Of a DNA stretch of 64,000 nucleotides, positions 8,553 through 59,190 are shown one piece after another; position 1 is the stretch's first letter, and each line of letters begins with the position of its first letter. A program made the position numbers and the translations under genes. The stretch comes from Hemiscyllium ocellatum (lineage: Eukaryota), in the NCBI RefSeq assembly GCF_020745735.1, contig NC_083409.1, positions 16,168,789-16,232,788 of the forward strand, in the 5' to 3' direction. Under the pieces are notes generated by a model, which worked only from the letters and a program-made list of their open reading frames with translations, had not been told where the DNA came from and did no database searches.

Positions 8553-8587
8553 TCAGTCTGAGCTTGGTTCCTTTACCGAACGTAAGA
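8553..8587 (-). CDS. IGKJ: Ig kappa-type J segment, cluster 1 (LTFGKGTKLRL)
   Basis: FGxGT motif, 35 nt, donor CTGA|GTAAGT (phase 1); its C exon would lie just left of the window by analogy with cluster 2. Confidence 0.95.
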
Positions 8588-8626
8588 CACAGTGAGAGCT
8601 CCCAGTGCAGAGGCTGTACAAAAACC
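8588..8626 (-). other. J1 recombination signal sequence, 23-bp spacer
   Basis: Sense strand GGTTTTTGT + 23 bp + CACTGTG abutting J; perfect consensus. Confidence 0.97.
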
Positions 8627-9062
8627 TCAGCTCTCTGCTTTCCTCTTATCACTGTCAACCTCTCTCTGTCTCTGTGTGTCTATCGCTCACTCTCACCCTC
8701 TCCCTGCCCCTCTCTGTCTCTCCCTCATTCATGTGTCTTTCTCTCTCTGTCTCTCTGGGTTGTTTCCAGCTGGGCTCGGGAGGTTTGTGAAATTTATTTT
8801 TCGATGTTAAATCTTGAGGCAGCTCTTCACATGTGGCCATGGAGTGTAAGAGAGAAACTAGAGGCCTTCAGTGAGCGTTGAGACACCACAGGGACTGGAG
8901 TGTGCCGTGGACAGTGGAAATCCCAGTTTGGGGTAATTTGATCAGTTTCATTCAGATCTAACTGGATATATCACTTCAGGCAGTGAGACTGTGTGTTCAT
9001 TATTATACATTTTATGTAACTGTGCGATGTGTCAGTCCAGGAGGTGGTGTTGTGCGTGTTGA

Positions 9063-9090
9063 GGTTTTTGTATGGCTCTGTATCACTGTG
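9063..9090 (-). other. V1 recombination signal sequence, 12-bp spacer
   Basis: CACAGTG + ATACAGAGCCAT (12) + ACAAAAACC; perfect consensus. Confidence 0.97.
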
Positions 9091-9389
9091 TCGAGGGTAG
9101 CTGCTATGCTGCTGACAGTAATAGTCAGCGACATCCTCATTCTGAACGTTGCTGATTGTCAGGGTGAAACTGGTCCCTGATCCACTGCCGGTGAATCGAT
9201 CGGAGACTCCTGTGAATCGAGTTGCTGCATTGTAGATCAGGAGAGAGGGTTTCTGACCTTCTCGCTGCTGGTACCAAGCAAGGTAGCTGCTAATGCTTTG
9301 ACTGGCCTTACAGGTGATGGTTGCGGTCTGGCCCAGTCCCACTGACAGCACCGGGGGAGACTGGGTCATGGTGATGTCCCCACTGATAC
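9091..9389 (-). CDS. IGKV: Ig kappa-type V exon, cluster 1, open frame ([27 protein letters not shown]...WYQQ...[11 protein letters not shown])
   Basis: Acceptor CCCCTCAG|GT; conserved Cys, WYQQ, GSGSGT and DYYC motifs; intact ORF; followed directly by a canonical RSS. Confidence 0.96.
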
Positions 9390-9575
9390 CTGAGGGGTCA
9401 GAGAGAAACACAGTGAAGTCAGAACTGTCACACAAAGAGCCTGTCAAATGAGAGATTGTTGGAGACACTGAGCATTCCTCTGGTTTCAGCATTTTCCCTT
9501 CAATCACAAGTCAGTGGAATTGGAGTGAAATGGAGAGCAGCGAAAGATTCAAGGTGGAAGGAGAGAGATTTGTAC

Positions 9576-9624
9576 CTGCGACACAGAATGCCAGGGGCCA
9601 GATCAGCTGGATGTGTGAAATCAT
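9576..9624 (-). CDS. IGKV: Ig kappa-type light chain cluster 1, leader exon (MISHIQLIWPLAFCVA+G)
   Basis: ATG at 9624 in CACCATG context; 49-nt hydrophobic exon ending GCAG|GTACAA (phase 1); 186-bp intron to the V exon. Confidence 0.93.
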
Positions 9625-9684
9625 GGTGTGTGCTCCTGTCCCTGTGCCTGGTTCCTGATAAACTCTCCCTTCACTGGGCTCTGC

Positions 9685-9781
9685 TTTATAAAGCTGCAGC
9701 CTGTGAGAGTCTGACTGGGTGTTCCTCAGTATGTAAATGGCATCAGGCAGAGAGAGCCACGTCAGCCCCACACACTTCCTC
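9685..9781 (-). promoter_or_regulatory. V1 promoter: PU-box GAGGAAGTG (9773-9781), TGACGTG (9758-9764), octamer variant ATTTACAT (9731-9738), TATA-like TTTATAAA (9685-9692)
   Basis: Motifs read directly; same order and spacing upstream of all three leaders; function inferred from known Ig promoter architecture. Confidence 0.7.
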
Positions 9782-10819
9782 TTCTCTCTCTCTCTCTCTC
9801 TCTGTCTCAGAGTCATTGATGTGAACAACATTGAATGAGGCCATTTGGCCCATTGTGTCTGTGCTGGTAAACAGCGGTCTGATGACACTAATCCCATCCT
9901 CCAGCTCTTGGCCCGTTACCCTGGAGGTTACAGCAACACAAGGGAATATCTAAACACTGCTCCAATGTCACGAGAGTTTGTGACTCAACCAGCCTTTCAG
10001 GCAGTGAGTTCCAGACTCCCACCACCCTCTGGGTGAAAACATTTCTTCTCAACTCTCCTCTCACTCTCCAATTCTCCAACTCGCCTGGCCATGGACTCAC
10101 TCGTGTTCAGAACGATGAGAGGGGATCTGATTGAAACATATAAAATTGTAACAGGGCTGGGCAGGGAGGAGGTTTCCCCTGGTTGGGGAGTCTGGAACCA
10201 GGGGACACAGGCTCAGGGGGATACAGGGTAGACCATTTAGGACTGAGATGAGGAAACATTTCTTCACTCAGAGGGTGGTCAACCTGTGGAATTCGCTACC
10301 ACTGAAGGCTGTGGAGGACAAGGAACTGAATATATTCAAGAAAACAAGAGAGATAATTGTTTTGCATTTTAACAACTTGAAGAGAATGGGGAGAACGCAG
10401 GAATATGGCTTTGAGAGAGAGGATCAGCCATAGATCATAGAATGCCTACAGTGTGGAAACAGGCCATTTGGCCCGACAAGCCCACACTGACCCTCGAAGA
10501 AATTATGACATTCAAAAATTGATACAGCCATGATCATACTGAATGACAGAGCAGACTCAAAGGGCCGAATGGCCTACTGCTGCTCCAAGTTTCTACGTGT
10601 CCATGTCTGTGTTACCTTCAATCTCTGTACCAGGTTTTTAAGTCTTTTACTCATGTAAAAAGTGCCATCCTACCTACCCTGTCACTGTTCTGAATAATCT
10701 TATCCCTCTCTATCAGGTCCCTGTTAAGCCTTCACTGCTCAAAGCTCACATTCAGGCAGCATCCTGGGAAATCTCCCCTGTACCCTCTCAGGTACAATCA
10801 CATTCTTCCCAGAGTGTGG

Positions 10820-11580
10820 TGACCAGGACCTGTCCCTCTCTCTCTCTGACTCACATCTGCCATTTCTTTCTCTCTACCTCTACCTCTCTCTCCCACTGTT
10901 AATCTCTTTCATGTTCTCTCTCTCTCTCTCTCTCTCCCTCTCTCTCTCTCTCTCACACACACACTCTGTCTCATAGCCACTCTCTCCAACTCACTGATGC
11001 TTTCTCACTCCATCTTATCATCTGTTTCTCCATCTCTCACTGTCTCTGTTACTCGCTCCCTCTCTCACTTCAATTAAAAGCCTCCAATTGTTATCTGTCA
11101 CTCTCTATTCCTCCCTCTTTCTCTCTCCTTCCCTCTCGACCTCCCAATTTACAGTCTCTCTCCCTCTCTCTCTCTGTCATTATAAATCTACCCATACTCA
11201 TCTCTCTCTCTCACACTCAACTCTACCCTCCCTCTCAACTCTCTTCATGCTTTGTCTCACACCCATCCTGTCTCTCTCTCTCTCTCTCTCTCCTTGTCTC
11301 TTTCTCTCTCTCCATCCCTCTCAGTCACACTGTCTCACATCTTGTTTCACTCTCTATCCCTCAGCCTCACCATTTCTACCTCCCTCTAACTCTCTCGGTC
11401 CCCTCACATATCTTACACCGTATCAGATGCTCGTCCCTCTATCTCTCTCTCTCACTTTCTTTCTTTCTTTCTCTCTCTCTCACACTCACACACACACACA
11501 CACACGCACGCCCACACTCACTATTTTTCCCTCCATCTCTCTCTCTGCCTCACTGCTCTCTCTTTCTGACAGTGTCCTGG
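10820..11580 (+). repeat. Long CT/CA low-complexity tract (homologues at 38930-39370 and 60380-61140)
   Basis: (CT)n and (CA)n runs in a pyrimidine-rich stretch. Confidence 0.9.
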
Positions 11581-12399
11581 GTGGTGACAGTTGAATGCAG
11601 GATAAATCTCCCTCTGCTCTGCCCCACTAATGGATGTTAACCCTTGACCCCTGTCTTCTCCTGGAGTAAGGCCCTATTTCCACGTTGACCAGGGTTTGGC
11701 CTCTCTCAGGAAGATGGACAGATTCTGGTCAAATGAAGGGCAGTTCTGTGCTGTTCTGTACTGTTGGCCTATTCTCACTGGGGACTGATTTGGACACAAA
11801 GCTCATTCCATGAAGGCCCAGCAGAGAGAGGAGATCCTCAGGCCATCAGTGTGAGTTGGAGGCACAGGACAAGCTCTGACCCACTGACCCATCCTGTCCA
11901 TTCACAACATGTTCCAATCCCTTCCCCTCTCCTTCCCCTTCCATGGTCAGTCTTTTCTGAAATGGAGTGGTCCCTTCCCTGTCTCACACCAAGGAGGAGA
12001 TGGACAGATATTTAATGGGTAATGGGTTAAAGGATGATGGAGAGTGGGCAGGAAAGTGGAGTTGAGTCTGAGATGGGATCAGCCATGATTGTATTAAATG
12101 GTGGAGTGGGCTCGAGGGGCTGAATTGCCTGCTCCTGCTCCTAGTTCTTATGTTCCTCCACCCTCTCCCCCATCCCTCTTACTGCAACTTTGTGAACATT
12201 CTTGGAATGTTTGGACATTGAAGGAGTTATGTGAATTCAAGATTTGTGTGGATTTAATGTGGGGACAGAATTGCACACGGGCTGTGATAGCTCCTGCGGT
12301 TGAATATCCTGCTGGCAGGCTTCCGCCTTCCATATACAGAATGGGGAAGTGGGGGAGGTGGGAATGTACTGCTGGGGTACACGGCACTGTCCTCTAACA

Positions 12400-14040
12400 A
12401 TGTGGTTGACTCTCTAGTGCCCTCTGAAATGGCCGCGCAAGGCTCTCAGTTTTATCAATTGTGACAATGTTTCAACAAAGAAATGAGACCGGACGGACCA
12501 CAGGCATCGATCTAGACACCGAAAAGACAATGACAGAAACAGTCCTGTCTACCCTGCTCTGTCCTCCTTACTGACATTTGGGAGTTAGTGCCAAATTCAG
12601 GAAAGCTGTCTCACAGACTAGTCAAGCAACAGCCTGACACTGTCATACTCACAGAACCATATAGACAATGTCCCAGACACTACCATCACTGTCCCTGCAT
12701 GTGTCCTGTCCCACCAGAAAGGCAGACCCAGCAGAGCTGATGACACAGTGGTCTACAGCCAGAAGGGAGTTACCCTGGGAAATCTCAAAGCTGGCTCTGG
12801 ACCTCATGACACCAGGTTAAACATGGGCGAGGAAACCTCCTGGTGATTACAAGATATCTTGCTCCCTCGGCTGATGAATCAGTCTCTCCTGGGTGTTGAA
12901 CAACATTTGGAGGAAGCACTGAGGGTGATGACAGCAGAGAGTGTACTCTGGGTGGGGGGTTTCAATGTCCACCACTGAGAGTGGCTCGGCAGCAGCATTA
13001 CTGATCGAGCTGGTTGGTTCCTCATGGGTGTAGCTGAGGGACTGGCTCTGCAGCTGGAACCAAAAGATGGAAAAAGATGCTTGACCCCATCCTCACCAAT
13101 CTTGTGGCTGTAGATGCATCTGTCCTTGACAGTGTTGGTAAGAGTGACCATCACACAGTCCTTGTGGAAACAAAGTCTGACCTTCACATTGAGAATCCCC
13201 TCCATTGTGTTGTGTGGTACTATCACCGTACTAAATAGGACAGACTCCAAACAGATATTGCAACTCAAGGCAAACTCGTAAATGGGGATGATTGCCAAAG
13301 ATTGCATAATGCTCAGCACTCTTCTCAACTCCTCAGATACTGAAGCAGTCCACGTGCAAATGCAACAATATCTGGACAATATCCAGGTTTTGTCTGAGAA
13401 GTGACATTTCCCATTGGTGCCATGCAAATGCCAGCCAATCACCATCACCAATAAGAGACAAACTTAACATCGCCCCTTGACAATCAATGCTATTACCATC
13501 ACTGAATCCCCACGATCAACATTCTTGAGGTGCCATTGACCAGAAACACAACTGGATTCACCAAAGAAACACAGTGGTTACAAGAGCAAGTTAGAGGCTA
13601 GGAATACTGCATCCAGTAATTCAACTCCTGATCCCCCAAAGCCTGTCAACCAAGTCAGGAGTGTGAGCAAATACTCCCCACTTGCCTGGACAGGTGCAGC
13701 TCCAACAACATTCACAGAGTCATACAGCACAGGAACAAACCCTTAAGCCAAACTTCTACATGCTGACCAGGTTTTCTGAAGTGAACTCATCTTATTTGCC
13801 TGCATTTCACACATATCCCTTGAAACCTTTCCTATCTATGTCGATTGTATCCTATGTCTTTCTTATCCACTCAAAAAGCTTGATACCATCCAGAGCAAAG
13901 CAAACTCCTTGATTGGCATCGCATTCTCAAAGCATCCAAACTCACCGTCACTGACGCTCCATAGCAGCAGTGTGTATTATCGAAAAGATGCACTGCAGAA
14001 ATTCATCACCGATCTTCAGATAGCACCTTCCAAACCCATG
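12400..14040 (+). mobile_element. Decayed APE-type non-LTR retrotransposon of a different family (L2-group-like); copy at 61960-63600, related fragment at 35110-35620
   Basis: APE-like remnants (..VKQQPDTVILTE.., GGFNVHH) broken by frameshifts. Confidence 0.6.
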
Positions 14041-14240
14041 GACAAAAATAGAAATTGCAGGAAAAGCTCAGCAGGTCTGGCAGCATCTTGGAGAGAAATC
14101 AGAATTAACATTTCAGGTTGAGCATGAAATATTAACTCTGATTTCTCTTCACAGATGCTGCCAGACCTGCTGAGCTTTTCCAGCACTTTCTATTTTTGTC
14201 TCAGATTTACAGCATCTGCAGTTCTTTTGGTTTCCCTCCA
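14041..14240. mobile_element. Third fold-back element (copy at 63603-63800)
   Basis: About 73-bp inverted arms GACAAAAATAGAAA..GCAGCATCT / AGATGCTGC..TTTCTATTTTTGTC; no hammerhead core left in the centre. Confidence 0.65.
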
Positions 14241-14789
14241 AACCCACGTTCACTTCCATTTAGAACAAGAGCAGCAGATACATGGGAACACTGTGAGCTG
14301 CAAGTTCCCCTCGAAAAAGCTTAGCATCCGGACTTGGAAATACGTCGCTGATCCCTCAGCCTTGCTGGGTTAAAATGCTGGCATTGTGGGTCAACTTACA
14401 GCTTGTGGACGATAACAATTCAAGATGGCAGCTTCCCACCACCTTCTCCAGGGCAACTAGGGACAGGGTAAAAAATGTTGGCCCAGCCGGTGAAGCCCAC
14501 TTCCCACAAGTGAATATGCAAAACCAAATGAAGTGTCCCTCAGGAGGGGAGAGGGAATGTTCAGGATCCTGAACTCCATTTCCCAGCCCAGGCAGTTTGT
14601 CTCCCAATGAATGAATGAGATGCCAATTTGAAGCCCAGGTTCAGGGCAGTCTCACTCTGTGGACATGAGGTCTATAAGAGAGAATTGGAGATTGAGCTGT
14701 AAAGGAAAGATTTGCTGGGTTATGGGGAGAGAGAGGGGAGCAGTGGGATTCACTGGGTCATTCAAAGGCATGATGGGCTGAATGGCCTC

Positions 14790-15050
14790 CTCCTGTGCTG
14801 TCAGATTCCAGGGAGTGCAGACAGTTTACAGTTTTCTCCCATCTCAGTAACAAACACCCAGCTGCTCCAAGCTCTTTCTTTCACTTCCTCTCTTGATGAA
14901 GTTTCAACCTTGTGCTCTGACAGTCTTTGCATTTATTTTTTACACTGGGGCTTTCTGCTGTGGTCAGAATCTCTAATAATAAGTGTTCAATCAGTGACAA
15001 TCACAGCAGCTAAGAGCAGTCAGGACTGAGGAGCCAGGCTCACTGGGAAA
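14790..15050. promoter_or_regulatory. Candidate B-cell enhancer block, left arm: EICE GAGGAAGTGAAA (minus, 14879-14890), E-box CAGCTG (14859-14864), RUNX TGTGGT (14959-14964)
   Basis: Block not recognisable as a repeat, conserved in inverted form at 34660-34920 with all three motifs retained. Confidence 0.55.
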
Positions 15051-15734
15051 CACATTGGGAAGATCAAAGCCATCCTCTTCAGCTCCTGGTACAAGCTCCA
15101 TCCCTCTCCCTGAGCACTGTCTGCTGCTCAACCAGACTCTTTACAACTTTGGCCTCATCTTTGGGGCTGATTTGAGGCCCAAATCCTCCACATCACAATT
15201 ATCAGCCACTGAAAATCTCAACCATGTTTTTGTGACCATTCCAATGATATCCAGGCCCACATCACAGCCACTGACTTCCGTAAACATCAGCTCATCCCAA
15301 ACTCTGCTGTCTGTTTTCAAACTCACACCAAGTCCACCCCATACCCCTGCCCAAACCTCCCCACCCCACCATGACCACCACAATCCTCACTGACTGACAT
15401 AAGCTCCTGGTCCAGCAACACCTCGATTTTTAAATTCTCATCCTTGTTCTCAATCTGCTCCCTGTTCTTCCACCCTCCCTATCTCTGTGACCTCCTCCAA
15501 GCTGCCTCACTCAGTGTGATCAATAATCTTGGATATATGGCTCTCTGTTTCTTCATCCAAATCATTGAGAAATATCGTGAAAAGCTGAGGTCCCAGCACA
15601 GATCCCTGGGAATACCACTACTCACATCTGTCTCATTGGAACACACGCACATTATCCTTCCTCTCTGTCTCCTAGACAGACCCATTCCTGACCCAAGGTA
15701 AATGCATTTCTCAAATTCCATCCAATTCCATGAT

Positions 15735-19650: not shown

Positions 19651-19679
19651 GTGCAATCTTTAACAGAGTATAATTTACA

Positions 19680-41561: not shown

Positions 41562-41999
41562 GCAAGTAAACCTCAATTGTCCGTTATTAACCCTGTCAAT
41601 ACTGAAATACACTTTCTAAAACACAAATGCTGAATTGTTGAAGGTGTTAGTGGGGAGCTGCAGTGAATGAAATGGTTGATTGAGGAGCACTGTGGCGAAC
41701 AGGGTGTCCAGCTGTACTTCTTTAGTTCCATTGCCCCGCTTAAGCAGCAAGACAGAAGTCAGTCAGTTTTACTCACTGTGTGGAGGAGCTCTGTCCATTT
41801 TCAGCCTGTGGTCCCATTCCTGCAGCATGGAGTGAAATCAGTGAGTAGCCTCCTGCCAGTCTCAGTGTGACAGACTCAGGGCAGATTTTGATGTGAGCTC
41901 TGGCTCCCTGTCCCAGTCTCTGATCTCACTGACCTCAGCAGCAGCAGCAGCAGCACAGTGAGACACCGAGCTCCCACCTCCCCCAGCTTTAACTCTGCT

Positions 42000-44900: not shown

Positions 44901-47900
44901 TTTCTCCACATCCTTCCCACTGGGTGGTGACTTATTGACTGCTGTGAGGATTCTGTGGTCCTTGGTGTTCCTCTCTGATATTTGCCCCTGGCTCCCACAG
45001 CCCTGCCAAGTTAGTTTAAACCCTCTCTAACAGTAGTAAACCACCTCACAAAAATCTAAAGCCCTCCCTCATGGATCCTCTTTCCAGCCCAGCAATCACC
45101 TGTGTTCACCTCCTGATTCTATTCTCACTTGTGTGGGGTGCTGCAAATGTGTTGCTGGAAAAGCGCAGCAGGTCAGGCAGCATCCAAGGAGCAGGAGAGT
45201 CGACGTTTCGGGCCTGAGCCCTTCTTCACTTGCGTGGGGCACTGGGAGTAATCTGGAGATTCCTACTTTTGAGTTCCTGCTACTAATTAGCAGCAGGAAC
45301 TCAAAAGTAGGAAGCTCCCAGATTACTTAAAAGTAGGAAGCTCCAAAACCTCTGACTGCAGGACTACATCCCTTTTCTCCCTCTGTCACTGGGACCGATG
45401 TGGACCACGAACTGCTGCCTGTTCCCCCTCTCCCTCAGGGTGGTCTGCAGCCGCTCAGTGATATCCTTGACGCTGGCACCAGGGAGACAACACACCATCC
45501 TGGATTCCCATCTGCAGCTGCAGAAACACCTATCGACTGCCTTCACTCTCCAATCTCCTCTCACTATCACTCTTCCAGTCTTCCTTGTGCCCCCTGTACA
45601 GCTGAGCCCCCCGTGGTGCCAGGGACTTCGCCCTGGCTACACTCCCCAGATGAACCATCATTCGCATCAGGATTCTGAACTGAATCCTGGTTGGAGAGTA
45701 GGATGTCTGGGGATTCCTGTACTAGCTGCCTGGTCCTTTTGGACTGTCTGCTGCTCCCCCATTCCCTCTCTCCCTGCATACTCTGAAGCTGCGGAGTGAC
45801 CACATCTAGAAACGTGCTCTTCACGGACCTCTCAGCCTCACGGACGCTCCGCACTGACACCAGCTGCTGCTCAAGCTCCAAAACCGGAGCTCCAACTGCT
45901 GTCACTGACCACACTTCCTGTACTCATGGTATTCCAGGAGCTGGGAAACATTCTGAAGTTCCCACATGGATGCACACTCTCTCCACTCTTGGATTATCTC
46001 TTTGCAAAGTTCTGATGACAAACAGCTACTACAGCAGGGCTCAGAGTCCAGTGTTCAGTGGGTTCAGTGTTCCAGGGTTTTGGAGAAACTCTCCAAAAGA
46101 CTTTAAGAAATAGGAGCAGAAATCAGCCATTCAGCCCATTGAATCTGCTCTGCCATTTGATCTTGGCAGATATGCTTCTCACCCCATTCTCTGCCTACTC
46201 CACAGGAACTTTCCATCCCCTTAACAATCACGAACCTATCTATCTCTGTCTTAAATACACTCAGTGACTTGGCCTCCCTGCCCTCTGTAACAATGAGTTC
46301 CACAGATTCACCACCCTCTGGCTGAAGAAATTCCTCCTCATCTCAGCTCTAAAGGGTCGGCCCTTCATTCTGAGGCTGTGCCTTGGTTAGCGAGTCTCTC
46401 CTGTTTTCGGAAACATCTTCTCCACATCCACTCTATCCAGGTCTATCTGTATTCTGCAAATTTCAATAAGATCCCGCCTCGTCCTTCTAAACTCCATTGA
46501 GTACAGACCCAGAGTCCTTAACCACGCTCATATGACAAGCCCTCCATCCCCAGGATCATTCTTGTAAACCCCTCCAATGCCAGCACATTGTTTCTTAGAA
46601 TATGGGTCCTAAATCTGTTCACAATATTCCAAATTCAGTCTGACCAGAGCCTTACACAGCCTCAGCAGTACATCTCTGCCCTTGTATTCTGGCCTATTGA
46701 AATGAATGCTAATATTTCATTTGCTTCCCAAGCACAAACTGTACCTGCCTGTTCACCTTAAGAAAATCCTGAATGAGGTTTGTGCTTTAGATTTCCAAAG
46801 GCTTTCCTCATTTAGAAAATACCTCCACACCCTGACTCCATTGATTCCTGAAAGATCATCAAAAATGTCTCCACAATCTCCTCAGTGATCTCCTTCAGAA
46901 CACACTGGTGTAATTCATCTAGTCTGGGTGAGTTATCCACACTCAGACATTTCAGCTTCCCCAGTACCTCCTCCTTAGTAATGGCCACTGCTCTCACCTC
47001 TGTCCCCTGACAGTCTTGAAGTACTGGACACTGCTGGTGTTTTCCATTGTGCAGACTGATGTAATGTATGTATTCAATTCCTCTGCTTTTTCTTCATTTC
47101 CTATTATTCTTTTTCCAATGTCTATTTCTGCCTCCATCTTCCTTTTTATATATCTGATGAAACTCTTGCAATCTTCTTTTATATTACTGGCTCGCTTTCC
47201 CCCACATTTCACCTTCTGTACCCTGATTTTTTTTTTAGTTATCCTCTACAGGTTTTTAAAGACTTCCTAATCCTCTGGCCTCCCACTATTTTCCACCACA
47301 TTGTGTGCTTTTTCTTTTGCTTTTATGCTGTCCTTGACCTCCCTCATCAGCCATGGTTACATTGTCCTCCCCTTAGTGTGTTTCTTCTTTTTTGGGATGA
47401 ATTCCTACTCTGCTTCCTGAATTACCCCCAGAAACTCTGCTGTTTGCTGCCACACCATCTTACCTGCTCGGCTCCCCTTCCAATCAACTCTGGCCAGCTC
47501 CTTCCTCACGTCTTTGTCGTTCCCTTTACTCAACTGAAATACTGTTCCATCTGATTACAGCTTCTCCCTCTCAAACTACAGGGGGAATTCTATCGTATTA
47601 TGGTCACTTATCCAGAGGGACACTTTCACCTTCAGCTCACTAATCAAGTTTGCCTCATTACACATCACTGAATCCAGAACTGCCTGTTCCAAACCGCAAG
47701 CTGTTTCAAAAACCATCTCATAGACATTCCATGAAATCTTTTTGTTGAGACGTGCTACCCAATCCACCTCTCCATTTTTTTAATGGATTTTCTGTCTCCT
47801 GATTGATTTCCTTCCCCACACCCTGTTTACTGCTTGGAGACCTGAACTTGCATCAGATTCTTTATTTCTTGGGTTCCTCAACTCTCCCCACACAGATTCT

Positions 47901-49500
47901 ACACCTTCTGACTGTATCTTTCTTGCTATTGATTTAAAGTCATTTCTTACTAACAAGGCAACTCCTGTCCCTCTGCTCTTCTGCCTGTCTTTTTGATAGG
48001 ATATGTATCCTTGGATATTTAGTTTCCAGCCGGATCCCCTTACAGCCATGTCCTGTGATACCCACAACATTGTACCTGCCAGTTTCAATCTGCACTACAA
48101 GCTCATTGTGTATACTTGTGCATTTAAGTACAACACCCTCAGTCCTGCATTGACTGCCCTCCTTCTCATCATTGTTCCTCTTATCTGCTGTGCTTGACAT
48201 TTGATTCCTGATCCCTTCCATGCTCTCAGTCCTATTACATCTTCCAGAATCTTTGCTAACCTCTCCTGAGCCCTCCTCCACTTTAACTAGTTTAATTACT
48301 TGGAAACTCAATTTACCTCGATTTGGGGCATCACTTTGTCTCCCTGACTCGGAATGCTTCGTGCATTTAGACACAAAATCTTTAAGGTTGATCTATTCTT
48401 GACTTTCCCTGCACTTTTATGGTTCTTTGATATTCAAAAATTCCTCCCTTCCTTTTATTTTTTGGTAACAATCAATCCCATCACTAACCAGCAATCCTAC
48501 CTTCTCCTTTACCTTCCATTTTCTCATTTTCCATCCAACTGAACCAAATTCCTTTCTCTTTGGGTTGAGTTCAGGACAATATTTATCCTTGAACCAAAAT
48601 CATGAAGAATGCTCTTTGATCCATTGCTTCCAGTGGGATCTTGCTGTGTAGAAATTGGCTGTCCCTTTCCTGAAATTGCAACAGTGACTGGTTTTCAAGC
48701 AAAGTGTAACTGTCTTTGGGAGAGTCTGAGGTGCTGAGGGCTTGATTGAAACACAATTAGAGTCAGGGAGATGTACAGCATGGAAACAGACTCTTCGATC
48801 TGACTCATCCATGTCAACCACAGAGACATAGAGTCATAGTGTCAGAGAGATGTACAGCACAGAAATAGATCCTTCTGTGTAACTTGTCCATGCCGACCAG
48901 ATAACCTAAATTAATCTAGTCCCATTTGTCAGTATTTGGCCCATATCCTTCTAAACCTTCCTATTCATATACTCACCCAAATGCCTTTTAAATGTTATCA
49001 TACCAGCCTCCAACTTCCTCTGGCAGCTCATTCCAAAAATGTACCACTCTCGGCAGGAAAACATTATGCCTTAGTTCCCGTTTAAATCATTCTCCTGATA
49101 CTTTCCACCTATGCCTCTAGTTCTGGACTCCTTCACTCTGACCAAAATATCTTCTCTATTCACTTGATCAATGCCCCTCATTATGTTAGAAACCTCGATA
49201 TGGTCATCCCTCAGCCTCCAGCGATCCAGGGAAAATAGCCTCAGCCTATTCAGCCTCTCCCGATCGCACAACCCTCCAACTTGGCAACATCTATGGAAAT
49301 CTTTTCTGAACCATTTTTCCTACAGCAGGGAGGCCAGAATTCCACACAGTATTCCAAAAGGGGCCAAACTAATGTCCTGTACAGGTGCAACAGCTCCAAC
49401 TCCAATACTCAATGCATTGCCCAATAAAGGAAAGCATGCCAAATGACTTTGTCACTCCCTACCTACCTGCAACTCCACTTTCAAGGAACTAATCTTTTTT
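42000..49500 (-). mobile_element. CR1-type LINE remnants in the J2-C intron, inverted homologues of 1-8100, with a SINE at 44425-44740
   Basis: Minus-strand ORF fragments mirror those at 600-8100; SINE with A-box-like CAGTGGTTAGCAC and B-box-like GGTTTGAATCC. Confidence 0.8.
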
Positions 49501-50068: not shown

Positions 50069-50392
50069 GCCGTGAAACTCTCAGCCCAAGCTGACCCTGC
50101 TGCCCCCTTCCCGGAGCAGGTCAATGCCAGGGCACTGCCACCCTGGTGTGCCTTGCCAATCACTTCTATCCCGATGAGCTGGAGGTGCAGTGGAAGAAGG
50201 ACGGTGCAGTCATTTCGGACGGGGTTCAGACCAGCAACTACCTGCGAGCTTCGGACAGCACCTACAGTGTCAGCAGCCTGCTGACCCTCTCTGGGTCTGA
50301 CTGGGAGTCCAACGCTCGCTTCTCCTGTGCCCTCACCCACGTGACCCTCCCCTCTCCTCAGCAAGAGCATCAGGAGATCAGAATGTGTGTAG
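50069..50392 (+). pseudogene. IGKC: Ig kappa-type constant exon (cluster 2), disrupted by four small deletions as assembled; pseudogene or consensus error
   Basis: Acceptor TTTCAG|GC; central frame VCLANHFYPDELEVQWKKDG...YSVSSLLTLSGSDWESNARFSCALTH; C-terminus SKSIRRSECV* in another frame; the spliced frame hits TGA at 50092-50094. Confidence 0.85.
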
Positions 50393-51450: not shown

Positions 51451-51463
51451 NNNNNNNNNNNNN
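51451..51463. other. Assembly gap (13 N) at the junction to the duplicated segment
   Basis: Run of N. Confidence 0.99.
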
Positions 51464-54400
51464 AGTAATTCAAGACTGTCAGGGGTCGGAGGGATGTATG
51501 GCCATCACTAAGAGGAGGTACTGGGAAGCAGAAAGGTCTGAATATGGATAACGCACCCAGACTGGATGACTACACCCCAGGTGGTTCTTAAAGAGATCAC
51601 TGAGGAGATTGTGGAGGCATTGGAGATGATCTTTCAGTAATCAATGAGTCAGGGTATGGAGGTGAGATGGGGACGGATTTGGTGGGGCCAAGGGACAGGA
51701 AAAATGGCTCACATACCACCCCTGTTTCAGAAGGGAGGGAGGTAGAAGGTGGGACATTGTAGGCCTGTTAGCCAGGACTCAGTTGTTGGTAAGGTTTTTA
51801 GACTTCAATTTAGGATGAAATTGCAGAGGATTGGAAGTGCAATGGCTTCATCAAGGAGACTCATGCCTGGGCAAATCTGTTAGAATTCTTTGAGGAGGCA
51901 AAGAGCCAGTCAGACAAAGGAGAGTCCGAGGAAGTAATCTCTTTGGATTTCCAGAAGGCATTTGACATAAGATAAGCGCCCACAGTGTAGTGGCAATGTA
52001 CTGGCATGGATTGAAGACTGGCAGGTTGGCATAAAGCAGAGCATGAGGAACAATGGCCGCTGGTGACGAGTAAGTTCTGCAGTTGTCAATGTTAGGCCAT
52101 AACTATTCACGTTATACATTAACAATCTGATGAAGGAAGTGAAGACATTGTTGCTAATTTGCACGTGACATGAGATAGGTGGAGGGACAGGTAGTGTTGA
52201 GGAAGTGGAAGGCTGTAAAAGCTCCTGGATAGGCTCGAGAGTGGGCAAAGAAGTGGCAGATAGATACAATGTGTGACAGTGTGAGGGTATGCACTTTGGG
52301 AGGAAGAAGAGATGCAAAGACTGTTTGCTAAAAGATAGAAAGCCTTTGGAATCTAAAGCACAAACCTCATTCAGGTTCCCTTCAGTTTAACAGGCAGGTC
52401 CAGTTTGTGCTTGGGAAGGCAAATGAAATGTTCGCATTCATTTCAATAGGGCCAGAATACAAGAGCAGAGATGTACTGCTGAGGCTGTGTAAGGCTCTGG
52501 TCAGACCACATTTTGAATATTGTGAGCAGATTTGGGACCCATATTCTAAGAAACAATGTGCTGGCATTGGAGGGGTTTACAAGAATGATCCTGGGGATGA
52601 AAGGCTTGTCATATGAGGCGTGGTTGAGGACACTGGGTCTGTACTCGATGGAGTTTAGAAGAATGAGGAGGGATCTTATTGAAATTTACAGAATACTGAT
52701 AGGCCTGGATAGAGTGGATGCAGGACAGACTCGGGAACCAAGGCACAGCCTCAGAATGAAGGGCCGACCCTTTTGAGCTGAGTGAGGAGGAATTTCTTCA
52801 GCCAGAAGGTGGTGAATCTGTGGAACTCATTGTTACAGAGGGCAGGGGAGGCCAAGTCACTGAGTGTATTTAAGACAGAGATAGATAGGTTCGTGATTGT
52901 GAAGGGGATCGAACGTTCCTGTGGAGTAGGCAGGAGAATGGGGGTGAGAAGCATATCTGCCAAGATCAAATGGCAGAGCAGATTCAATGGGCTGAATGGC
53001 TGATTTCTGCTCCTATTTCTTAAAGACTTCTGGAGAGTTTTCCCCAAAACCCTGGAACACTGAACCCACTGGACTGTGAGCCCTGCTGGAGCTGTTTGTC
53101 ATCAAACTTTGCCAAGAGACAAACAAAGAGTGGAGAGAGTGTGCATCCATGTGGGAATTTCAGAATGCTTTCCCAGCTCCTGGAATACCATGAGTACAGG
53201 AAGTGAGTCTGTGACAGCAGTTAAGCTCCGGGTTTTTGGAGCTTGAGCAGCAGCTGGTGTCAGTGCGGAGCGTCTGTGAGGCTGAGAGCTCCGTGGAGAG
53301 CACGTTTCTAGATGTGGTCACTCTGCAGCCTCAGAGTATGCAGGGAGAGAGGGAATGGGGGAGCAGCAGACAGTCCAAAAGGATCAGGCAGCTAGTATAG
53401 GAGTCCCCAGGCATCCCACTCTCCAACCAGGATACAGTTCAGAATCCTGATGAGAATGATGGTTCATCTGGGGAGTGCAGCCAGAGCCAAGTCCATGGCA
53501 TCACTGGTGACTCAGCTATAATGGGGGTTGCCGGGGCGGTGGTGGGGGGAGGGGGTGAGGGTGGTGGGTGGTGGGGTGTGTATTAGCAAGACTGGAAGAT
53601 GATCGTAAAAGGAGATTTGAGAGTGAGGGCATCGATAGGTGTTTCTGCAGCTGCAGATGGGAATCCAGGATGGTGTGTTGTCTCCCTGGTGCCAGGTGAA
53701 GATGTCACTGAGCGACTGCAGAGCACACCTGAGGGGAGAGGGAACAGGCAGCAGTCGTGTCCACATCGGTCCCAGTGACAGAGGGAGAAAAGGATGTAGT
53801 CCTGCAGTCATAGAATTTAGGGAGCTCAGAGGGAAATAACATCAGGAACTCAAAAGTAGGAATCTTCAGATTACTCCCAGTGCCCCAGGCAAGTGACAAG
53901 AGGAGCAGGAGGATAACACAAGTGACTGTGGGCTGGAAGAGGATCCAGGAGGGAGGGTTTTAGATTCTTGTGACATCGGGACTGGGTCTGGGGAGATGGG
54001 ACCTGGATAGACCAGACAGCGTTGCTCCTGAACAGAGCTGGCACTGAGCTCCTTTGAGGTGATCTACTCGTGCTGTTGGAGAGGGTTTAAAACTAACTTG
54101 GCAGAGCTGTGGGAGTCAGGAGGGACTGTCAGAGAGGAACACCAAGGTCCACAGAATCATCAGTGCAGTCAATAAGTCACCACCCAATGGGAAGGATTTA
54201 GAGGAATACATTTGCAAGGAATTTACAGAGACCTGCAAATATAATAGTCATTATAAATGGGGTTGGGGGGGGTGGAATTTCTTTAATTTCTGAATATAGA
54301 CTGGGGTAGTAGCAGTGTGAAGGACAGAGGGGCCAGAGTCGTGAGAGTGTGTTCATGTGAATTTTCTCCACTGCATTGTTTCCAGTCCAATGAGAAAGGA

Positions 54401-55684
54401 GGCTCTGCTAGATCTGGATCTTGGGAATGAGGAGGCCCAAGTGGATCACGTGTCAGTGAGAGGACACTTAAGGAAGAGTGATCATTGTATCACAAAGTTG
54501 AGGGTGACGGTAGAAAAGAACAAAGGCCTTTTCAGGGTCAAACATCTTCACTGGGGAAATGCCAGCTTCTATAGGATATGGATGTATCGGATCTGAATAA
54601 AGTGGATCAAAGGTTGGCAGGAAAGTCCTGAAAAGAATAGTAGAGGATGTGGACCAGGTATAGTCGAGATACATTTGAAGGAGGGCAAACAATTCCTGAA
54701 CTTACTCAAGGGCAAAAGTGGTAGAATTATGGTAAATAAGAAAAGGGCAAAAGAGTAACTAGAGAGAGAATAGGGCCCCATGAAGATGAACAATGTACCT
54801 CTGGGTGGATCCACAGGAAATGGTTTAGGTCTTAAATGAATATTCCAGGTCAGTATTTATCATGGAGAAAGACATGGAAATTTGGGAACTTGGAAATAAA
54901 TAGTAATGTCTTGACACAAGTCCACATTATAGAAGAAGATTTCTTAAAGTGCAAGACGGTAGATAAATCTCCAGGACCTGATCAGGTGTATCCCAGGACA
55001 TTGTGGAAAGCTAGGAAAGAGATTGCTGGATCCCTTGCTGAGGTATGTTTCTGATTGACAGCCATGAGTGAGGTTCTGGAGAACCAGAGAGGTTGGCTAA
55101 TGTTAGCCATTATTTAAGAAAGGCTGTAAGGAAAAGCCAGGGAAAATAATCCAGTGAGCCTGATGTCATTGCTGGGTAAGTTATTGGAGTGAATTCTGAG
55201 GGACAGGATTTACATGCATTTGGACAAACAATGCAGTTTTGTGCATGGTAATCATGTCTCACTAACGTGATTGAGGTTGTTTGAAGAGAAGATTGATGTA
55301 GGCAAAACAGTACACACTGTCTATATAGACTTCAGCAAAGCATTTGACAAGTTCCACATGATAGACTGATTAGTAAGGTTAGGCCACATGGGATCCAGGG
55401 GAGCTAGCCATTTGGGTAAAAAAAATGACTTCAAGATAGGAGACAGAGAGTGGTGGTAAGGGGTTGCTTTTCAGACTGGAGATCAGATGTCAGCTGTGTG
55501 CCACAAGGATTGGGTCCTTGGCTTTTTATCATTTAAATAAATGATTTGGATGTGAATATAGGAATTATGGCGAGTTTGTAAATGACACCAAAATTGGTGG
55601 TACAGTGGATAGTGAAGAAGCTTATCTGAGAGTACAGTGGGACCTTGATCATTTGGGGAAATGGGCAGAGGTGTGGCAAATGGA

Positions 55685-55895
55685 CAAAAGTGCAGACTGC
55701 AGATGCTGGAAACCAGAGTTTAGATCAGAGTGGTGCTGGAAAAGCACAGCATGTCAGGCAGCATCCGAGGAGCAGAAAAATCGACTTTTCGGCTAGAGGA
55801 AATCTGATGAAGGGCTTTTGCCCGAAACGTCGATTTTCCTGCTCCTGGATGTTGCCTGACCTGCTGTGCTTTTCCAGCACCACTCTGATCTAAAC
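55685..55895. mobile_element. Copy of the 6061-6272 fold-back element, hammerhead-like core at 55804-55831
   Basis: CTGATGA-A-GGGC-TTTT-GCCC-GAAAC-GTC; same TSD. Confidence 0.8.
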
Positions 55896-56006
55896 GTGTG
55901 ACAAATGGAGTTCAATTTAGATAAATGTGAGATGTTGCATTTTGGAAAGTCAAACCAGGCAGGACTTATACTGTTAATGGTGGGCCCTGTGGAGTGTTGC
56001 TCAACA

Positions 56007-56185
56007 AAGTGACCTGTGGGGGCCGGGCAGGGTGCAGGTGTGGCAGCAGGGGCAGGTGCAGTGCAGGCACAGGGGCAGGGTGGCAGGGGCAGCAGGGGCA
56101 GTGGCATGCAGGCAAGGGCAGCAGGGGCAGGGGCAGTCAGGGGCAGTGGCACAGGAGTGCACACAGGGCATTATTCCTTGACAGT
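56007..56185 (+). repeat. G-rich (GGGGCA/GGCAG)n tandem expansion inside a CR1 RT fragment
   Basis: Repeated GGGGCAG and GGTGCAG units; occupies the position of the 233-N gap in copy 1. Confidence 0.85.
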
Positions 56186-57060
56186 GAAGTCACAGGGAGA
56201 CAGAGATGAAGAAGGTGTTGGGTACACTTGCCTTTATTGGTCACTGCACTAAGTATCAGAGTTGGGACATCATTTGCAGCTGTACAGGAAATTGGTGAGG
56301 CTATTTTGGGAATAACGTGGACAATTCTGATCATCCTGTGATAGGAAGGATGCTGTTAAACTTAAAATTCTGCAGAAAAGATTTACATGGATGTTGCCTG
56401 GAACTGGAGGGTTTGAACTGTCGGAAGAGGTTATTTTTCCTGCAGGATCGGAGACTGAGGGGTGGCCTTATAGATGTTTATAAAATCTTGACAGGCATGG
56501 ACAGGGTGTATATCCCAGGTCTTTGCCTTGGGAAAGGGAATGTAAAACTAGAGGGTATAGGTTTAAGATGAGAGGCAAAAGATCCAAAAGGGACCTGAGG
56601 GGTAACTTGTCACACAGAGGGTGGTGCGTGTACAGATCGAGCTGTCAGAGAAAGTGCTGGAGACGGATACAATTATAACATTTAAAAGATGTTTGGATGG
56701 GTACATGAATAGGAAGGGTTTAGAGGGATGTGGGCTAAATGCTGGCAAATGGGATGAGGTCAGTTTTGGATATCTAGTTAGCATGGAGGAGTTAGACTGA
56801 AAGATCTGTTTCCACGCTGTCTGACTCTGTGACATTAGTGGCTGGAAAAGCTGAGATCTTTTACCCTGAAGTGCCGGAGGCTGAGGAGTGACCTTACAGA
56901 GGTTTATAAAATCATGAGGGACATAAATAATGTGAATAATGCAGGAAGGAGGTGAATGTTTTGTAGAGCTGGCAAACATATGCACAAAGATCATTCCAGG
57001 GATGAGGAATATCAGTTCTGAAGATAGATTGGAGAATTTGGGACTGTCTTCTTTGGAGAA

Positions 57061-57262
57061 AGTTACAGATCACACAACATCAGGTTATAGTCCAACAGGT
57101 TGATGTGGAAGCACTAGCTTTTGGAGCGCCGCTGACAATCATTTGATGAAGGAGGGGCGCTCCGAAAGCTAGTGCTTCCAAATAAACCCCCTGTTGGACT
57201 ATAACCTGGTGTTGTGTGATTTTTAACTTTGTCCACCCCAGTCCAACACCGGCACCTCCAAG
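57061..57262. mobile_element. Copy of the 7497-7698 fold-back element
   Basis: Same arms and TCTTTGGAGAA TSD; core TTGATGA-A-GGAG-GGGCG-CTCC-GAAAGCTA. Confidence 0.78.
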
Positions 57263-57712
57263 TCTTTGGAGAAGGCAGCGAGGAGAATTGTTCCAGAAAT
57301 TCAAAATCAGGAGGGGCCTGGAACAGAGTAAATTGGGAGAAAATGATTCCACTTGTGAAAGGATTGAGACGTGAGGCCACAGATTGAAAGTAATTGGAAA
57401 AGTAAGAAAAGTGAGATGAGGGAAAACATTTTCAGCCAGTGGGTGGTTAAGGTGTGGAATGCACTGCCTGAGAGTGTGGTGGAGGCAGCTTCAATTAAAA
57501 CATTCCGAAGGGAATGAGACTGTTATCTGAAAAGGAACAATGTGCAGGGTGACAGGGAGAAGGCAGGAGAATGACACTCAGTCAATTGCTCATTCGGAGA
57601 GCTAGTCCAGACAGGATGGACGGAATGGCCTTCTTGTGCACTGTAACAATTCTGTGATTGTGTGATTGAGCAGAGTTAAAGCTGGGGGAGGTGGGAGCTC
57701 GGTGTCTCACTG

Positions 57713-57744
<32 letters not shown>

Positions 57745-58119
57745 AGGTCAGTGAGATCAGAGACTGGGACAGGGAGCCAGAGCTCACATCAAACTCTGCC
57801 CCGTGTCCGTCACACTGAGACTGGCAGGAGGCTACTCACTGATTTCACTCCATGCTGCAGGAATGGGACCACAGGCTGCAAATGGACAGAGCTCCTCCAC
57901 ACGGTGAGTAAAACTTACTGACTTATATCTTGCTTTTTTTAAAGAGGGCATGAAAGTAAAGAAATACAGCTGGACACCCTGTTAGACACAGTGCTCCTCA
58001 ATCAACCATTTCATTCACTGCAGCTTCCCACTAACACCTTCAACAAATCAGCAACTGTATTTTAGAAAGTGTGTTTCAGTATTGACAGGGTTAATAACAG
58101 AGGATTGAGGTTTACTTAC

Positions 58120-58154
58120 TCAGTCTGAGCTTGGTTCCTTTACCGAACGTAAGA
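58120..58154 (-). CDS. IGKJ: Ig kappa-type J segment, cluster 3 (LTFGKGTKLRL)
   Basis: Identical to J1; GTAAGT donor; no minus-strand C exon between it and the gap at 51451. Confidence 0.92.
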
Positions 58155-58193
58155 CACAGTGAGAGCTCCCAGTGCAGAGGCTGTACAAAAACC
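58155..58193 (-). other. J3 23-RSS
   Basis: GGTTTTTGT + 23 bp + CACTGTG; matches J1. Confidence 0.95.
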
Positions 58194-58629
58194 TCAGCTC
58201 TCTGCTTTCCTCTTATCACTGTCAACCTCTCTCTGTCTCTGTGTGTCTATCGCTCACTCTCACCCTCTCCCTGCCCCTCTCTGTCTCTCCCTCATTCATG
58301 TGTCTTTCTCTCTCTGTCTCTCTGGGTTGTTTCCAGCTGGGCTCGGGAGGTTTGTGAAATTTATTTTTCGATGTTAAATCTTGAGGCAGCTCTTCACATG
58401 TGGCCATGGAGTGTAAGAGAGAAACTAGAGGCCTTCAGTGAGCGTTGAGACACCACAGGGACTGGAGTGTGCCGTGGACAGTGGAAATCCCAGTTTGGGG
58501 TAATTTGATCAGTTTCATTCAGATCTAACTGGATATATCACTTCAGGCAGTGAGACTGTGTGTTCATTATTATACATTTTATGTAACTGTGCGATGTGTC
58601 AGTCCAGGAGGTGGTGTTGTGCGTGTTGA

Positions 58630-58656
58630 GGTTTTTGTAGGCTCTGTATCACTGTG
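58630..58656 (-). other. V3 RSS with an 11-bp spacer
   Basis: CACAGTG + ATACAGAGCCT (11) + ACAAAAACC; one base shorter than V1. Confidence 0.88.
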
Positions 58657-58955
58657 TCGAGGGTAGCTGCTATGCTGCTGACAGTAATAGTCAGCGACAT
58701 CCTCATTCTGAACGTTGCTGATTGTCAGGGTGAAACTGGTCCCTGATCCACTGCCGGTGAATCGATCGGAGACTCCTGTGAATCGAGTTGCTGCATTGTA
58801 GATCAGGAGAGAGGGTTTCTGACCTTCTCGCTGCTGGTACCAAGCAAGGTAGCTGCTAATGCTTTGACTGGCCTTACAGGTGATGGTTGCGGTCTGGCCC
58901 AGTCCCACTGACAGCACCGGGGGAGACTGGGTCATGGTGATGTCCCCACTGATAC
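58657..58955 (-). CDS. IGKV: Ig kappa-type V exon, cluster 3 (translation identical to V1)
   Basis: 299 nt, open frame; ORF-track translation identical to V1 up to the RSS. Confidence 0.92.
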
Positions 58956-59141
58956 CTGAGGGGTCAGAGAGAAACACAGTGAAGTCAGAACTGTCACACA
59001 AAGAGCCTGTCAAATGAGAGATTGTTGGAGACACTGAGCATTCCTCTGGTTTCAGCATTTTCCCTTCAATCACAAGTCAGTGGAATTGGAGTGAAATGGA
59101 GAGCAGCGAAAGATTCAAGGTGGAAGGAGAGAGATTTGTAC

Positions 59142-59190
59142 CTGCGACACAGAATGCCAGGGGCCAGATCAGCTGGATGTGTGAAATCAT
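59142..59190 (-). CDS. IGKV: Ig kappa-type cluster 3 leader exon
   Basis: Matches the cluster 1 leader; ATG at 59190, GT donor at 59141. Confidence 0.9.

What the first reader, a model, noticed from the sequence alone, without database searches (positions are those of the whole stretch)
8553..59190. Three kappa clusters within ~50 kb in alternating orientation, allowing inversional joining between clusters
Seen: V1-J1 (minus) and V2-J2 (plus) are head-to-head, with leaders about 31 kb apart. V2-J2-C and V3-J3 converge, and the only C exon lies between them. All V segments have 12-type RSSs and all J segments 23-type RSSs. Geometry: V1 and V3 (signal left, coding right) could join J2 by inversion, V2 could join J1 by inversion, and V3 could join J1 by deletion. 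A V3-J2 inversion would give V3 the C exon it lacks in this assembly. Established: shark Ig loci are clusters generally thought to rearrange internally, while inversional inter-cluster joining is described for teleost light chains. Inference: such tight spacing could allow combinatorial or editing rearrangements in a shark.
Basis: partly seen in the sequence, partly recalled or inferred. Interest (0 to 1): 0.8.

Follow-up and report, generated by a model that had tools for sequence, protein, structure and literature searches.

The report
Two shark kappa clusters, one duplicated
The window holds two ordinary shark antibody light-chain (kappa) mini-genes facing away from each other 31 kb apart; the "third" one is a near-identical repeat of the first that starts exactly at an assembly gap and is probably an assembly duplicate, so the proposed cross-cluster joining is only a geometric possibility.

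Summary
Three things change the picture.

(1) Block 51464-64000, which holds V3-J3, is a direct copy of 1806-14438, which holds V1-J1. Identity is 99.6% over 7.8 kb. The copy begins at the first base after the 13-N gap. Its first 4.5 kb carry about 40 one-base deletions that no read contig shows. 13-N gaps are the optical-map scaffolder's mark for overlapping contigs. Cluster 3 is therefore probably a false duplicate of cluster 1. At the least, its "missing C" is a gap effect, because cluster 1's own C also lies outside the window.

(2) V2 has a one-base frameshift, and its heptamer reads TACAGTG where signals keep CAC. J2 has a GC splice donor.

(3) The only C exon has four frame breaks 1.0-1.4 kb from a contig end. 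These are probably consensus errors.

What remains is a head-to-head pair from an old inverted duplication (arms 80-90% identical). V1-to-J2 inversion across 32 kb is geometrically possible, but nothing shows it happens.

First-reader notes report the same 13-N pattern at four other places in this genome.

The parts
9576..9624 (-). V1 leader exon (ATG at 9624-9622); octamer-like ATTTACAT and a TATA-like box lie upstream
9091..9389 (-). V1 V exon, intact, kappa-like V-set domain
9063..9090 (-). V1 RSS: perfect heptamer, 12-nt spacer, perfect nonamer
8588..8626 (-). J1 RSS: perfect, 23-nt spacer
8553..8587 (-). J1 (LTFGKGTKLRL), followed by a GTAAGT donor
6386..6618 (.). 233-N sized assembly gap inside the J1-C1 intron; C1 itself lies left of the window
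3..15674 (-). Cluster 1 arm of an old inverted duplication
   Evidence: HSPs at 74-90% identity to the cluster 2 arm
34066..49088 (+). Cluster 2 arm of the inverted duplication
40486..40534 (+). V2 leader exon
40721..41015 (+). V2 V exon, 94.6% identical to V1, with a one-base deletion (C4 instead of C5) near 40753 that shifts the frame
41016..41043 (+). V2 RSS: heptamer TACAGTG (first base mutated), 12-nt spacer, perfect nonamer
41488..41526 (+). J2 RSS: 23-nt spacer, one nonamer mismatch
41527..41563 (+). J2 (YTFGKGTKLRL, 41527-41561) and its GC (not GT) splice donor at 41562-41563
50069..50392 (+). C exon (C1-set) of cluster 2. Acceptor AG is at 50067-50068. There are four frame breaks, near 50092, 50117, 50134 and 50355. 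AATAAA is at 50922-50927
51451..51463 (.). 13-N gap; the near-identical copy starts at 51464
51464..64000 (.). Direct copy of 1806-14438 (97.3% then 99.6% identity). The first 4.5 kb are rich in one-base deletions. Probably an overlapping contig, that is, a false duplicate
58657..59190 (-). V3 (leader 59142-59190, V exon 58657-58955); coding sequence identical to V1
58630..58656 (-). V3 RSS; the spacer is 11 nt in the assembly (one base fewer than V1)
58120..58193 (-). J3 (58120-58154) and its perfect 23-RSS (58155-58193); identical to J1

Best explanation
The window holds two real shark kappa-type light-chain miniclusters. Each is laid out as V, about 0.5 kb, J, a long intron, then C, and each is built to rearrange within itself by deletion. 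They stand head-to-head as the arms of an old inverted duplication. The arms are about 15 kb long and 74-90% identical, with an 18-kb spacer between them.

Cluster 1 (V1-J1, minus strand) looks functional. Its C exon lies just left of the window.

Cluster 2 (V2-J2-C2, plus strand) has a V with a frameshift and a mutated heptamer, so V2 is probably a pseudogene. J2 keeps a good signal and has a GC donor. The four frame breaks in C2 are probably consensus errors near a contig end.

The 'third cluster' is not a separate gene. The contig that starts after the 13-N gap re-reads the same locus from the equivalent of position 1806 onward. It is either the second haplotype or an unmerged overlap. The scaffolder placed it in tandem, which produced a false 49.6-kb duplication.

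Shown here: the anatomy, the copy relation, the error pattern and what a 13-N gap means. Inferred: that the copy is an artefact rather than a very recent real duplication, and that the C2 breaks are errors.
For: - Copy relation. 6619-14438 equals 56186-64000 at 99.6% identity, and 1806-6385 equals 51464-56006 at 97.3%. Both are direct, and the copy starts at the first base after the 13-N gap.
- Error pattern in the copy. Copy 3's first 4.5 kb have 36 one-base deletions (22 of them G) against 8 in copy 1. No contig from four DNA runs shows any of the one-base deletions (table 4).
- Errors in copy 1 too. At 10 listed sites where the copies differ, the contigs carry the copy-3 letter (fully or partly), so copy 1's contig end is also imperfect and the true copies are closer than 97%.
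- Meaning of 13-N gaps. They are inserted by Bionano Solve where contigs overlap in map space, and artificial duplicates flank them (10.1101/858365 and 10.1101/2020.12.28.424581). The other gap in the window is sized at 233 N, so gaps were being sized in this assembly.
- Repeats at the contig ends. Both contig ends at the gap lie in interspersed repeats. Word depth around 1806 is 5-10 times the baseline, and an open frame runs straight through 1806 in copy 1.
- Real variants. The 19 substitutions in the well-polished 7.8 kb are 12 transitions and 7 transversions. This looks like real variation at 0.24%, compatible with two haplotypes.
- C2 breaks. Three successive -1 shifts fall at C or G runs, and one 2-nt loss falls in a TC run, all within 324 nt and 1.0-1.4 kb from the contig end. 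The rate matches that of the deletion-rich contig start.
- Lead only. Notes from neighbouring windows place a J with a GC donor and an upstream conserved island at exactly the offset (49,562) expected if the copy continues for at least 39.7 kb. Four other 13-N-hinged duplications are noted in this genome. Both are unchecked leads.
Against: - A real, very recent tandem duplication would also give near-identical copies, and assemblers also break at true repeat boundaries.
- The read test was weak. Only short Logan contigs (100-380 nt) were available, the stretch is repeat-rich, no listed contig bridges 1806, and the tool states that its depth is not a copy number.
- At seven sites, contigs from all four runs differ from both assembled copies. 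Some laid contigs may therefore come from paralogous loci.
- The 0.24% of transition-biased differences shows two distinct molecules, which fits paralogs as well as alleles.
- The scaffolding method of this assembly was not verified.
- Tail-to-tail and inverted kappa pairs are noted elsewhere in this genome, so a real alternating array is plausible.
Confidence: 0.6

Rival explanations
1. Real, very recent tandem duplication of a unit of about 50 kb or more that contains the head-to-head pair. Cluster 3 is then a true third cluster. Its own C exon, and the tail-to-tail junction with C2, lie in unassembled sequence at the 13-N gap.
For: The copies differ by 19 transition-biased substitutions in 7.8 kb, so they come from two distinct molecules. 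Unchecked notes from other windows describe tail-to-tail and inverted kappa pairs elsewhere on this chromosome. Contig breaks at true repeat boundaries are common.
Against: A real gap of at least 4 kb should have been sized, like the 233-N gap, and not written as 13 N. The copy starts mid-repeat, exactly at a contig end that is full of consensus errors. Contig depth just left of 1806 is not lower than to its right, but this is a weak measure. At the differing sites that could be assessed, contigs from four runs show both letters at very few sites and mostly carry only one copy's letter.
Confidence: 0.3
2. The close, alternately oriented clusters exchange segments in B cells by RAG-mediated inversion (V1 or V3 to J2, V2 to J1) or by deletion (V3 to J1), giving combinatorial or editing rearrangements as in zebrafish.
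For: The signal orientations and the 12/23 pairing permit it. V1 and J2 are only 32.4 kb apart within one gap-free contig (6619-51450). J2 keeps a near-perfect signal while its own V is defective. Zebrafish light-chain clusters do this (PMC3014032).
Against: No junction or transcript evidence was obtained. The V2 heptamer lacks the conserved CAC and V2 is frameshifted (PMC12711392). Cluster 3 is probably not real. V1/V3 and J1/J3 are identical, so most of the proposed products could not be told from intracluster joins. Reviews state that all data place shark joining within clusters (PMC5192425). No relic signal joint is present in the germline window. The genome holds many other kappa clusters, so a V1-type CDR3 joined to a J2-type J would not by itself prove an inter-cluster join.
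Confidence: 0.07

Closest known systems
Cartilaginous-fish kappa (type III, NS4-like) light-chain miniclusters
   Same: There is one V with a split leader and a 12-spacer signal, and one J with a 23-spacer signal about 0.5 kb downstream. There is one C1-set C exon, and everything within a cluster has the same orientation. The V is strongly kappa-like (organisation as reviewed in PMC5192425).
   Different: Two clusters stand head-to-head only 31 kb apart. Reviews quote 82 to more than 200 kb for shark heavy-chain clusters and assume deletion only. The J-C intron is long (8.5 kb) and full of repeats. One member has a defective V.
Zebrafish IgL inversional inter-cluster rearrangement (Zimmerman et al. 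2008, PMC3014032)
   Same: Several V-J-C clusters lie on one chromosome within tens of kb, with segments in both polarities. V carries 12-type signals and J carries 23-type signals. An inversion would place a V from one cluster in front of the J-C of another.
   Different: In zebrafish the joins are documented by cDNA clones fitted to the genome, and V often lies opposite to J-C within a cluster. Here each cluster is internally co-oriented and no join has been observed.
False tandem duplications flanking 13-N gaps in optical-map hybrid scaffolds
   Same: There is a 13-N gap, and the sequence after the gap repeats sequence before it. The copy starts exactly at the gap, and the contig ends are error-rich.
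   Different: The overlap would be unusually long (49.6 kb). Only its first 12.5 kb are visible in the window. The assembly method and read coverage were not checked here.
Mammalian Ig-kappa inversional V-J joining and receptor editing
   Same: The 12/23 logic is the same, and inversion keeps the intervening segments for later use.
   Different: Mammals have one J-C unit with many V. Here each V has its own J-C, so a cross-join would swap constant-region units.

Membership tests
Shark kappa-type V-J-C minicluster | V exon with a split leader encoding a V-set domain most similar to kappa V | tested here: met
   Pfam V-set, E = 5.5e-17. The best solved-structure matches are mammalian kappa V domains, with E values down to about 1e-40 for single domains.
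Shark kappa-type V-J-C minicluster | 12-spacer RSS at V and 23-spacer RSS at J, facing each other 250-500 bp apart | tested here: met
   The gaps between nonamers are 436-444 bp. Exceptions: the V2 heptamer is TACAGTG and the V3 spacer is 11 nt.
Shark kappa-type V-J-C minicluster | One C1-set C exon downstream of J on the same strand | tested here: inconclusive
   Met for cluster 2 (C1-set, E = 7.9e-20), but with four frame breaks. The C exon of cluster 1 is outside the window. The C exon of cluster 3 is absent because its contig starts at the gap.
Teleost-type inversional inter-cluster IgL system | V of one cluster and J-C of another in opposite polarity on one chromosome, at short distance | tested here: met
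   V1 (minus strand) and J2-C2 (plus strand) are 32 kb apart on one gap-free contig.
Teleost-type inversional inter-cluster IgL system | Transcripts or DNA junctions that join a V of one cluster to the J-C of another | not tested
V1/V3 and J1/J3 are identical, and many other kappa clusters exist in the genome, so a whole-genome V and J catalogue would be needed.
False duplication at a 13-N scaffold gap | A 13-N gap with the same sequence before and after it, and the copy starting at the gap | tested here: met
False duplication at a 13-N scaffold gap | Read depth shows one copy, not two | tested here: inconclusive
   One search shows no depth step at 1806. However, only short contigs were available, the DNA is repeat-rich, and the depth reported is not a copy number.
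False duplication at a 13-N scaffold gap | The assembly was scaffolded with optical maps | not testable with these tools
   The source assembly is not disclosed. One sized gap (233 N) alongside one 13-N gap fits that pipeline.

The most novel reading that the evidence does not exclude
The array is real: kappa clusters alternate in orientation every 17-31 kb, and V1-type segments occasionally invert onto J2-C2. Since J2-C2's own V is dead, J2-C2 would then survive as a spare J-C unit used only through inter-cluster joining. That would be the first RAG-mediated inter-cluster (editing-like) rearrangement in a cartilaginous fish.
Probability: 0.08. Interest if true: 0.7.

Novelty: new member of a known kind. 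Interest (0 to 1): 0.25.

Why it matters
Shark antibody genes are the textbook case of autonomous miniclusters that rearrange only within themselves. Part of the usual argument for this is that the clusters are far apart and co-oriented (PMC3014032, PMC5192425). A gap-free contig with two kappa clusters head-to-head only 31 kb apart shows that distance and polarity do not forbid cross-joining at this locus. If joining really is intracluster only, something else must enforce that, for example accessibility of one cluster at a time. That point is modest but testable.

The larger practical lesson is a caution. In this assembly, near-identical Ig clusters that restart at 13-N gaps should not be counted as extra genes. 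Frame breaks near contig ends should not be read as pseudogenes without read support.

Tried and rejected
- Search for further C exons or V fragments. A regex over six frames and tblastn with V1, the C piece and a related shark chain found none beyond three V, three J and one C. The 90%-identical blocks at 2678-3883, 45590-46819 and 52324-53527, which I first suspected to be C exons, look like fragments of interspersed repeats; their ORFs show no Ig-like sequence.
- Copy-number step at the duplication boundary. DNA contigs from four runs were laid on 1-6000. The stretch is repeat-rich, the contigs are 100-380 nt, and none of those listed bridges 1806. The result was no step, which is inconclusive.
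- Using differing letters to separate alleles from paralogs. Contigs drop minor variants and may come from paralogous loci, since seven sites differ from both copies. This gives only weak support.
- Test for error enrichment at the end of contig A, by counting one-base gaps in cluster 2 against cluster 1 alignments. There is a mild excess (26 against 8) with no clear gradient, so it is not decisive.
- RNA test of V-J usage. RNA runs from the same sample exist (X24 and X27), but the only read-laying run had already been used.
- Search for a germline signal-joint relic: none found.
- Pfam on the open frames at the two contig ends: no family matched. Their repeat nature therefore rests on read depth and on my recollection of LINE-like motifs.
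Full report
**What is in the sequence**

An RSS scan found five canonical signals. With mismatches allowed it found a sixth. There are three 23-spacer signals against 0.06 expected by chance, and two 12-spacer signals against 0.08 expected. A third V signal with an 11-nt spacer was found.

Reading the three regions and aligning them gives three V-J units:
- V1 is on the minus strand: leader 9576-9624, V exon 9091-9389, 12-RSS 9063-9090. J1 is 8553-8587, with a 23-RSS at 8588-8626.
- V2 is on the plus strand: leader 40486-40534, V exon 40721-41015, RSS 41016-41043. J2 is 41527-41561, with a 23-RSS at 41488-41526.
- V3 is on the minus strand: leader 59142-59190, V exon 58657-58955, RSS 58630-58656. 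J3 is 58120-58154, with a 23-RSS at 58155-58193.

V1 and V3 translate to the same intact V-set domain. Their nearest solved relatives are mammalian kappa V domains.

The window holds exactly three V, three J and one C exon. The C exon is a C1-set domain on the plus strand at 50069-50392, 8.5 kb downstream of J2.

The V1 and V2 start codons are 30.9 kb apart. No gap lies between them, because contig 6619-51450 is continuous.

**The gap, tested first**

Self-BLAST shows two direct matches:
- 6619-14438 equals 56186-64000 at 99.6% identity.
- 1806-6385 equals 51464-56006 at 97.3% identity.

The copy therefore begins at the very first base after the 13-N gap (51451-51463) and runs to the end of the window.

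The left side of the gap lies 1.0 kb downstream of the C exon, inside a repeat-like open frame that the contig end cuts off. The right side corresponds to position 1806. In copy 1 that position sits in the middle of a different open frame that runs straight through it. It also lies in DNA with 5-10 times the baseline word depth.

The left flank has no counterpart next to 1806. The two sides are therefore not shown to be continuous, and no coding frame crosses the gap.

**Nature of the copy**

In the first 4.5 kb after the gap, the copy has 36 one-base deletions relative to 1806-6385. Twenty-two of them are of G. Only 8 go the other way. In the next 7.8 kb there are only 8 indels and 19 substitutions.

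I laid contigs from four DNA-like runs of the same organism on 1-6000. None of the one-base deletions appears in any contig (table 4). They are therefore consensus errors of a thin contig end.

At 10 listed sites where the copies differ, the contigs carry the copy-3 letter and mostly not the copy-1 letter. The end of the contig before the 233-N gap is therefore also imperfect, and the two copies are really closer than 97%.

The 19 substitutions in the clean block are 12 transitions and 7 transversions. That is real variation at 0.24%, and it fits two haplotypes or two very young paralogs.

The contig depth just left of 1806 is not lower than to its right. I give this little weight. The stretch is repeat-rich, no listed contig bridges 1806, the tool says its depth is not a copy number, and seven sites differ from both copies in all runs, so some contigs may come from paralogous loci.

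**Meaning of a 13-N gap**

Two papers state that the Bionano hybrid scaffolder writes 13 N where contigs overlap in map space or where the overlap is undetermined. They also state that artificial duplicates are found on both sides of such gaps (10.1101/858365 and 10.1101/2020.12.28.424581).

The window's other gap is sized at 233 N, so gaps were being sized in this assembly.

As unchecked leads only:
- Notes from neighbouring windows place a J with a GC donor and a conserved upstream island exactly where the copy would put them if it continued for at least 39.7 kb at the same offset.
- First readers flagged four other near-identical duplications restarting at 13-N gaps in this genome, three of them in kappa or Ig clusters.

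Taken together, the best reading is that the contig after the gap re-reads the locus from position 1806 onward. The overlap is 49.6 kb, and 'cluster 3' is cluster 1 seen twice. I put this at about 0.6.

A real recent duplication with sequence missing at the gap gets about 0.3.

Under either reading, 'V3 lacks a C exon' is an effect of where the contig starts. Cluster 1 has no C exon in the window either. Homology of 3-251 to 49088-48837 puts C1 about 1 kb left of position 1.

**Cluster 2**

V2 is 94.6% identical to V1. It has C4 where V1 and V3 have C5 near 40753, which shifts the frame. Its heptamer is TACAGTG. The first three heptamer bases are strictly conserved in functional signals (PMC12711392). 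V2 is therefore a poor recombination substrate, and probably a pseudogene, whatever the status of the frameshift.

J2 has a good 23-signal and the FGKG motif. Its splice donor is GC instead of GT.

I compared the C exon with a related shark light chain from the protein search (P0001, 83% identical). The frame changes four times:
- Three successive -1 shifts fall at C or G runs, near 50092, 50117 and 50134.
- One shift near 50355 is equivalent to a 2-nt loss in a TC run.

Apart from these breaks, the amino-acid sequence is conserved through to the terminal cysteine motif. All four breaks lie 1.0-1.4 kb from the contig end. Their rate, about 1 per 100 nt, matches the deletion-rich contig start on the other side of the gap. 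I infer consensus errors, but I did not test this with reads.

**How the locus arose and works**

The cluster 1 arm (3-15674) and the cluster 2 arm (49088-34066) are inverted copies at 74-90% identity around an 18-kb spacer. Coding and signal elements are better kept than the V-J spacer. The leader intron is 97% identical, the V exon 95%, the signals 96-97%, and the V-J spacer 83%.

This is an old inverted duplication of a standard minicluster. Each unit has facing 12 and 23 signals about 440 bp apart. This is the arrangement that gives intracluster deletion, as described for cartilaginous fish (PMC5192425).

**The inter-cluster idea**

The V1 and J2 signals point the same way and lie 32.4 kb apart. 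An inversion would put V1 in front of J2-C2, and the geometry is sound.

But nothing shows it happens:
- No relic signal joint is present in the germline.
- No transcripts or junctions were examined. Reads were laid on the duplication question.
- Three of the four proposed joins involve either the probable duplicate (V3) or the defective V2.

Transcript evidence would also be hard to read. V1/V3 and J1/J3 are identical, and this chromosome carries many more kappa clusters.

The literature states that all data place shark joining within clusters, and it attributes this partly to distance and common polarity (PMC3014032, PMC5192425). Inversional inter-cluster joins are documented only in zebrafish (PMC3014032). 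The head-to-head pair at 31 kb is therefore a useful counter-example to the 'too far, same polarity' argument, and no more than that.

**Verdict**

These are ordinary shark kappa miniclusters, new members of a known kind. One pair is head-to-head, one member has a defective V, and a probable false duplicate creates the impression of a third, C-less cluster. Interest is 0.25.

The most novel reading still open is real inter-cluster inversion onto a J-C unit whose own V is dead. I put this at about 0.08.

Noticed in passing
window 41562-41563: The J2 splice donor is GC (GCAAGT), where J1 and J3 have GT (GTAAGT). An unchecked note reports the same feature at the position expected for the copy of J2 beyond the window.
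   Followed up: partly
window 50069-50392: The C exon keeps a conserved protein sequence but changes frame four times. Three are -1 shifts at C or G runs and one is a 2-nt loss in a TC run. All lie within 1.4 kb of a contig end, which looks like long-read consensus error and not decay.
   Followed up: partly
window 51464-56006: The first 4.5 kb of the contig after the 13-N gap have about one single-base deletion per 100 nt, mostly of G. No read contig shows any of them. Any gene models here would be unreliable.
   Followed up: yes
window 14789-15335 and 34367-34921: A 550-bp island about 5 kb upstream of each V is kept at 87.8% identity between the inverted arms. Other notes propose it as an enhancer. 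It was not examined here.
   Followed up: no
window 27050-27560: A 510-bp segment is its own reverse complement at 86.7% identity (self-BLAST), inside the central spacer. Another note calls it a Penelope fold-back.
   Followed up: no
protein P0001: A 133-aa shark-type kappa light-chain fragment (CDR3-J-C) is filed in NCBI nr as a partial Salmonella enterica protein. This is presumably contamination of that bacterial assembly.
   Followed up: no
window 9727-9741, 40369-40383, 59293-59307: All three V promoters carry ATTTACAT (an octamer with one change) about 110 bp upstream of the ATG, followed by a TATA-like TTTATAAA.
   Followed up: no
window 30597-31175: A reverse-transcriptase fragment (Pfam RVT_1, E = 3.7e-9) lies in the spacer between the two clusters. 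The J-C introns and the spacer are largely made of interspersed repeats.
   Followed up: partly
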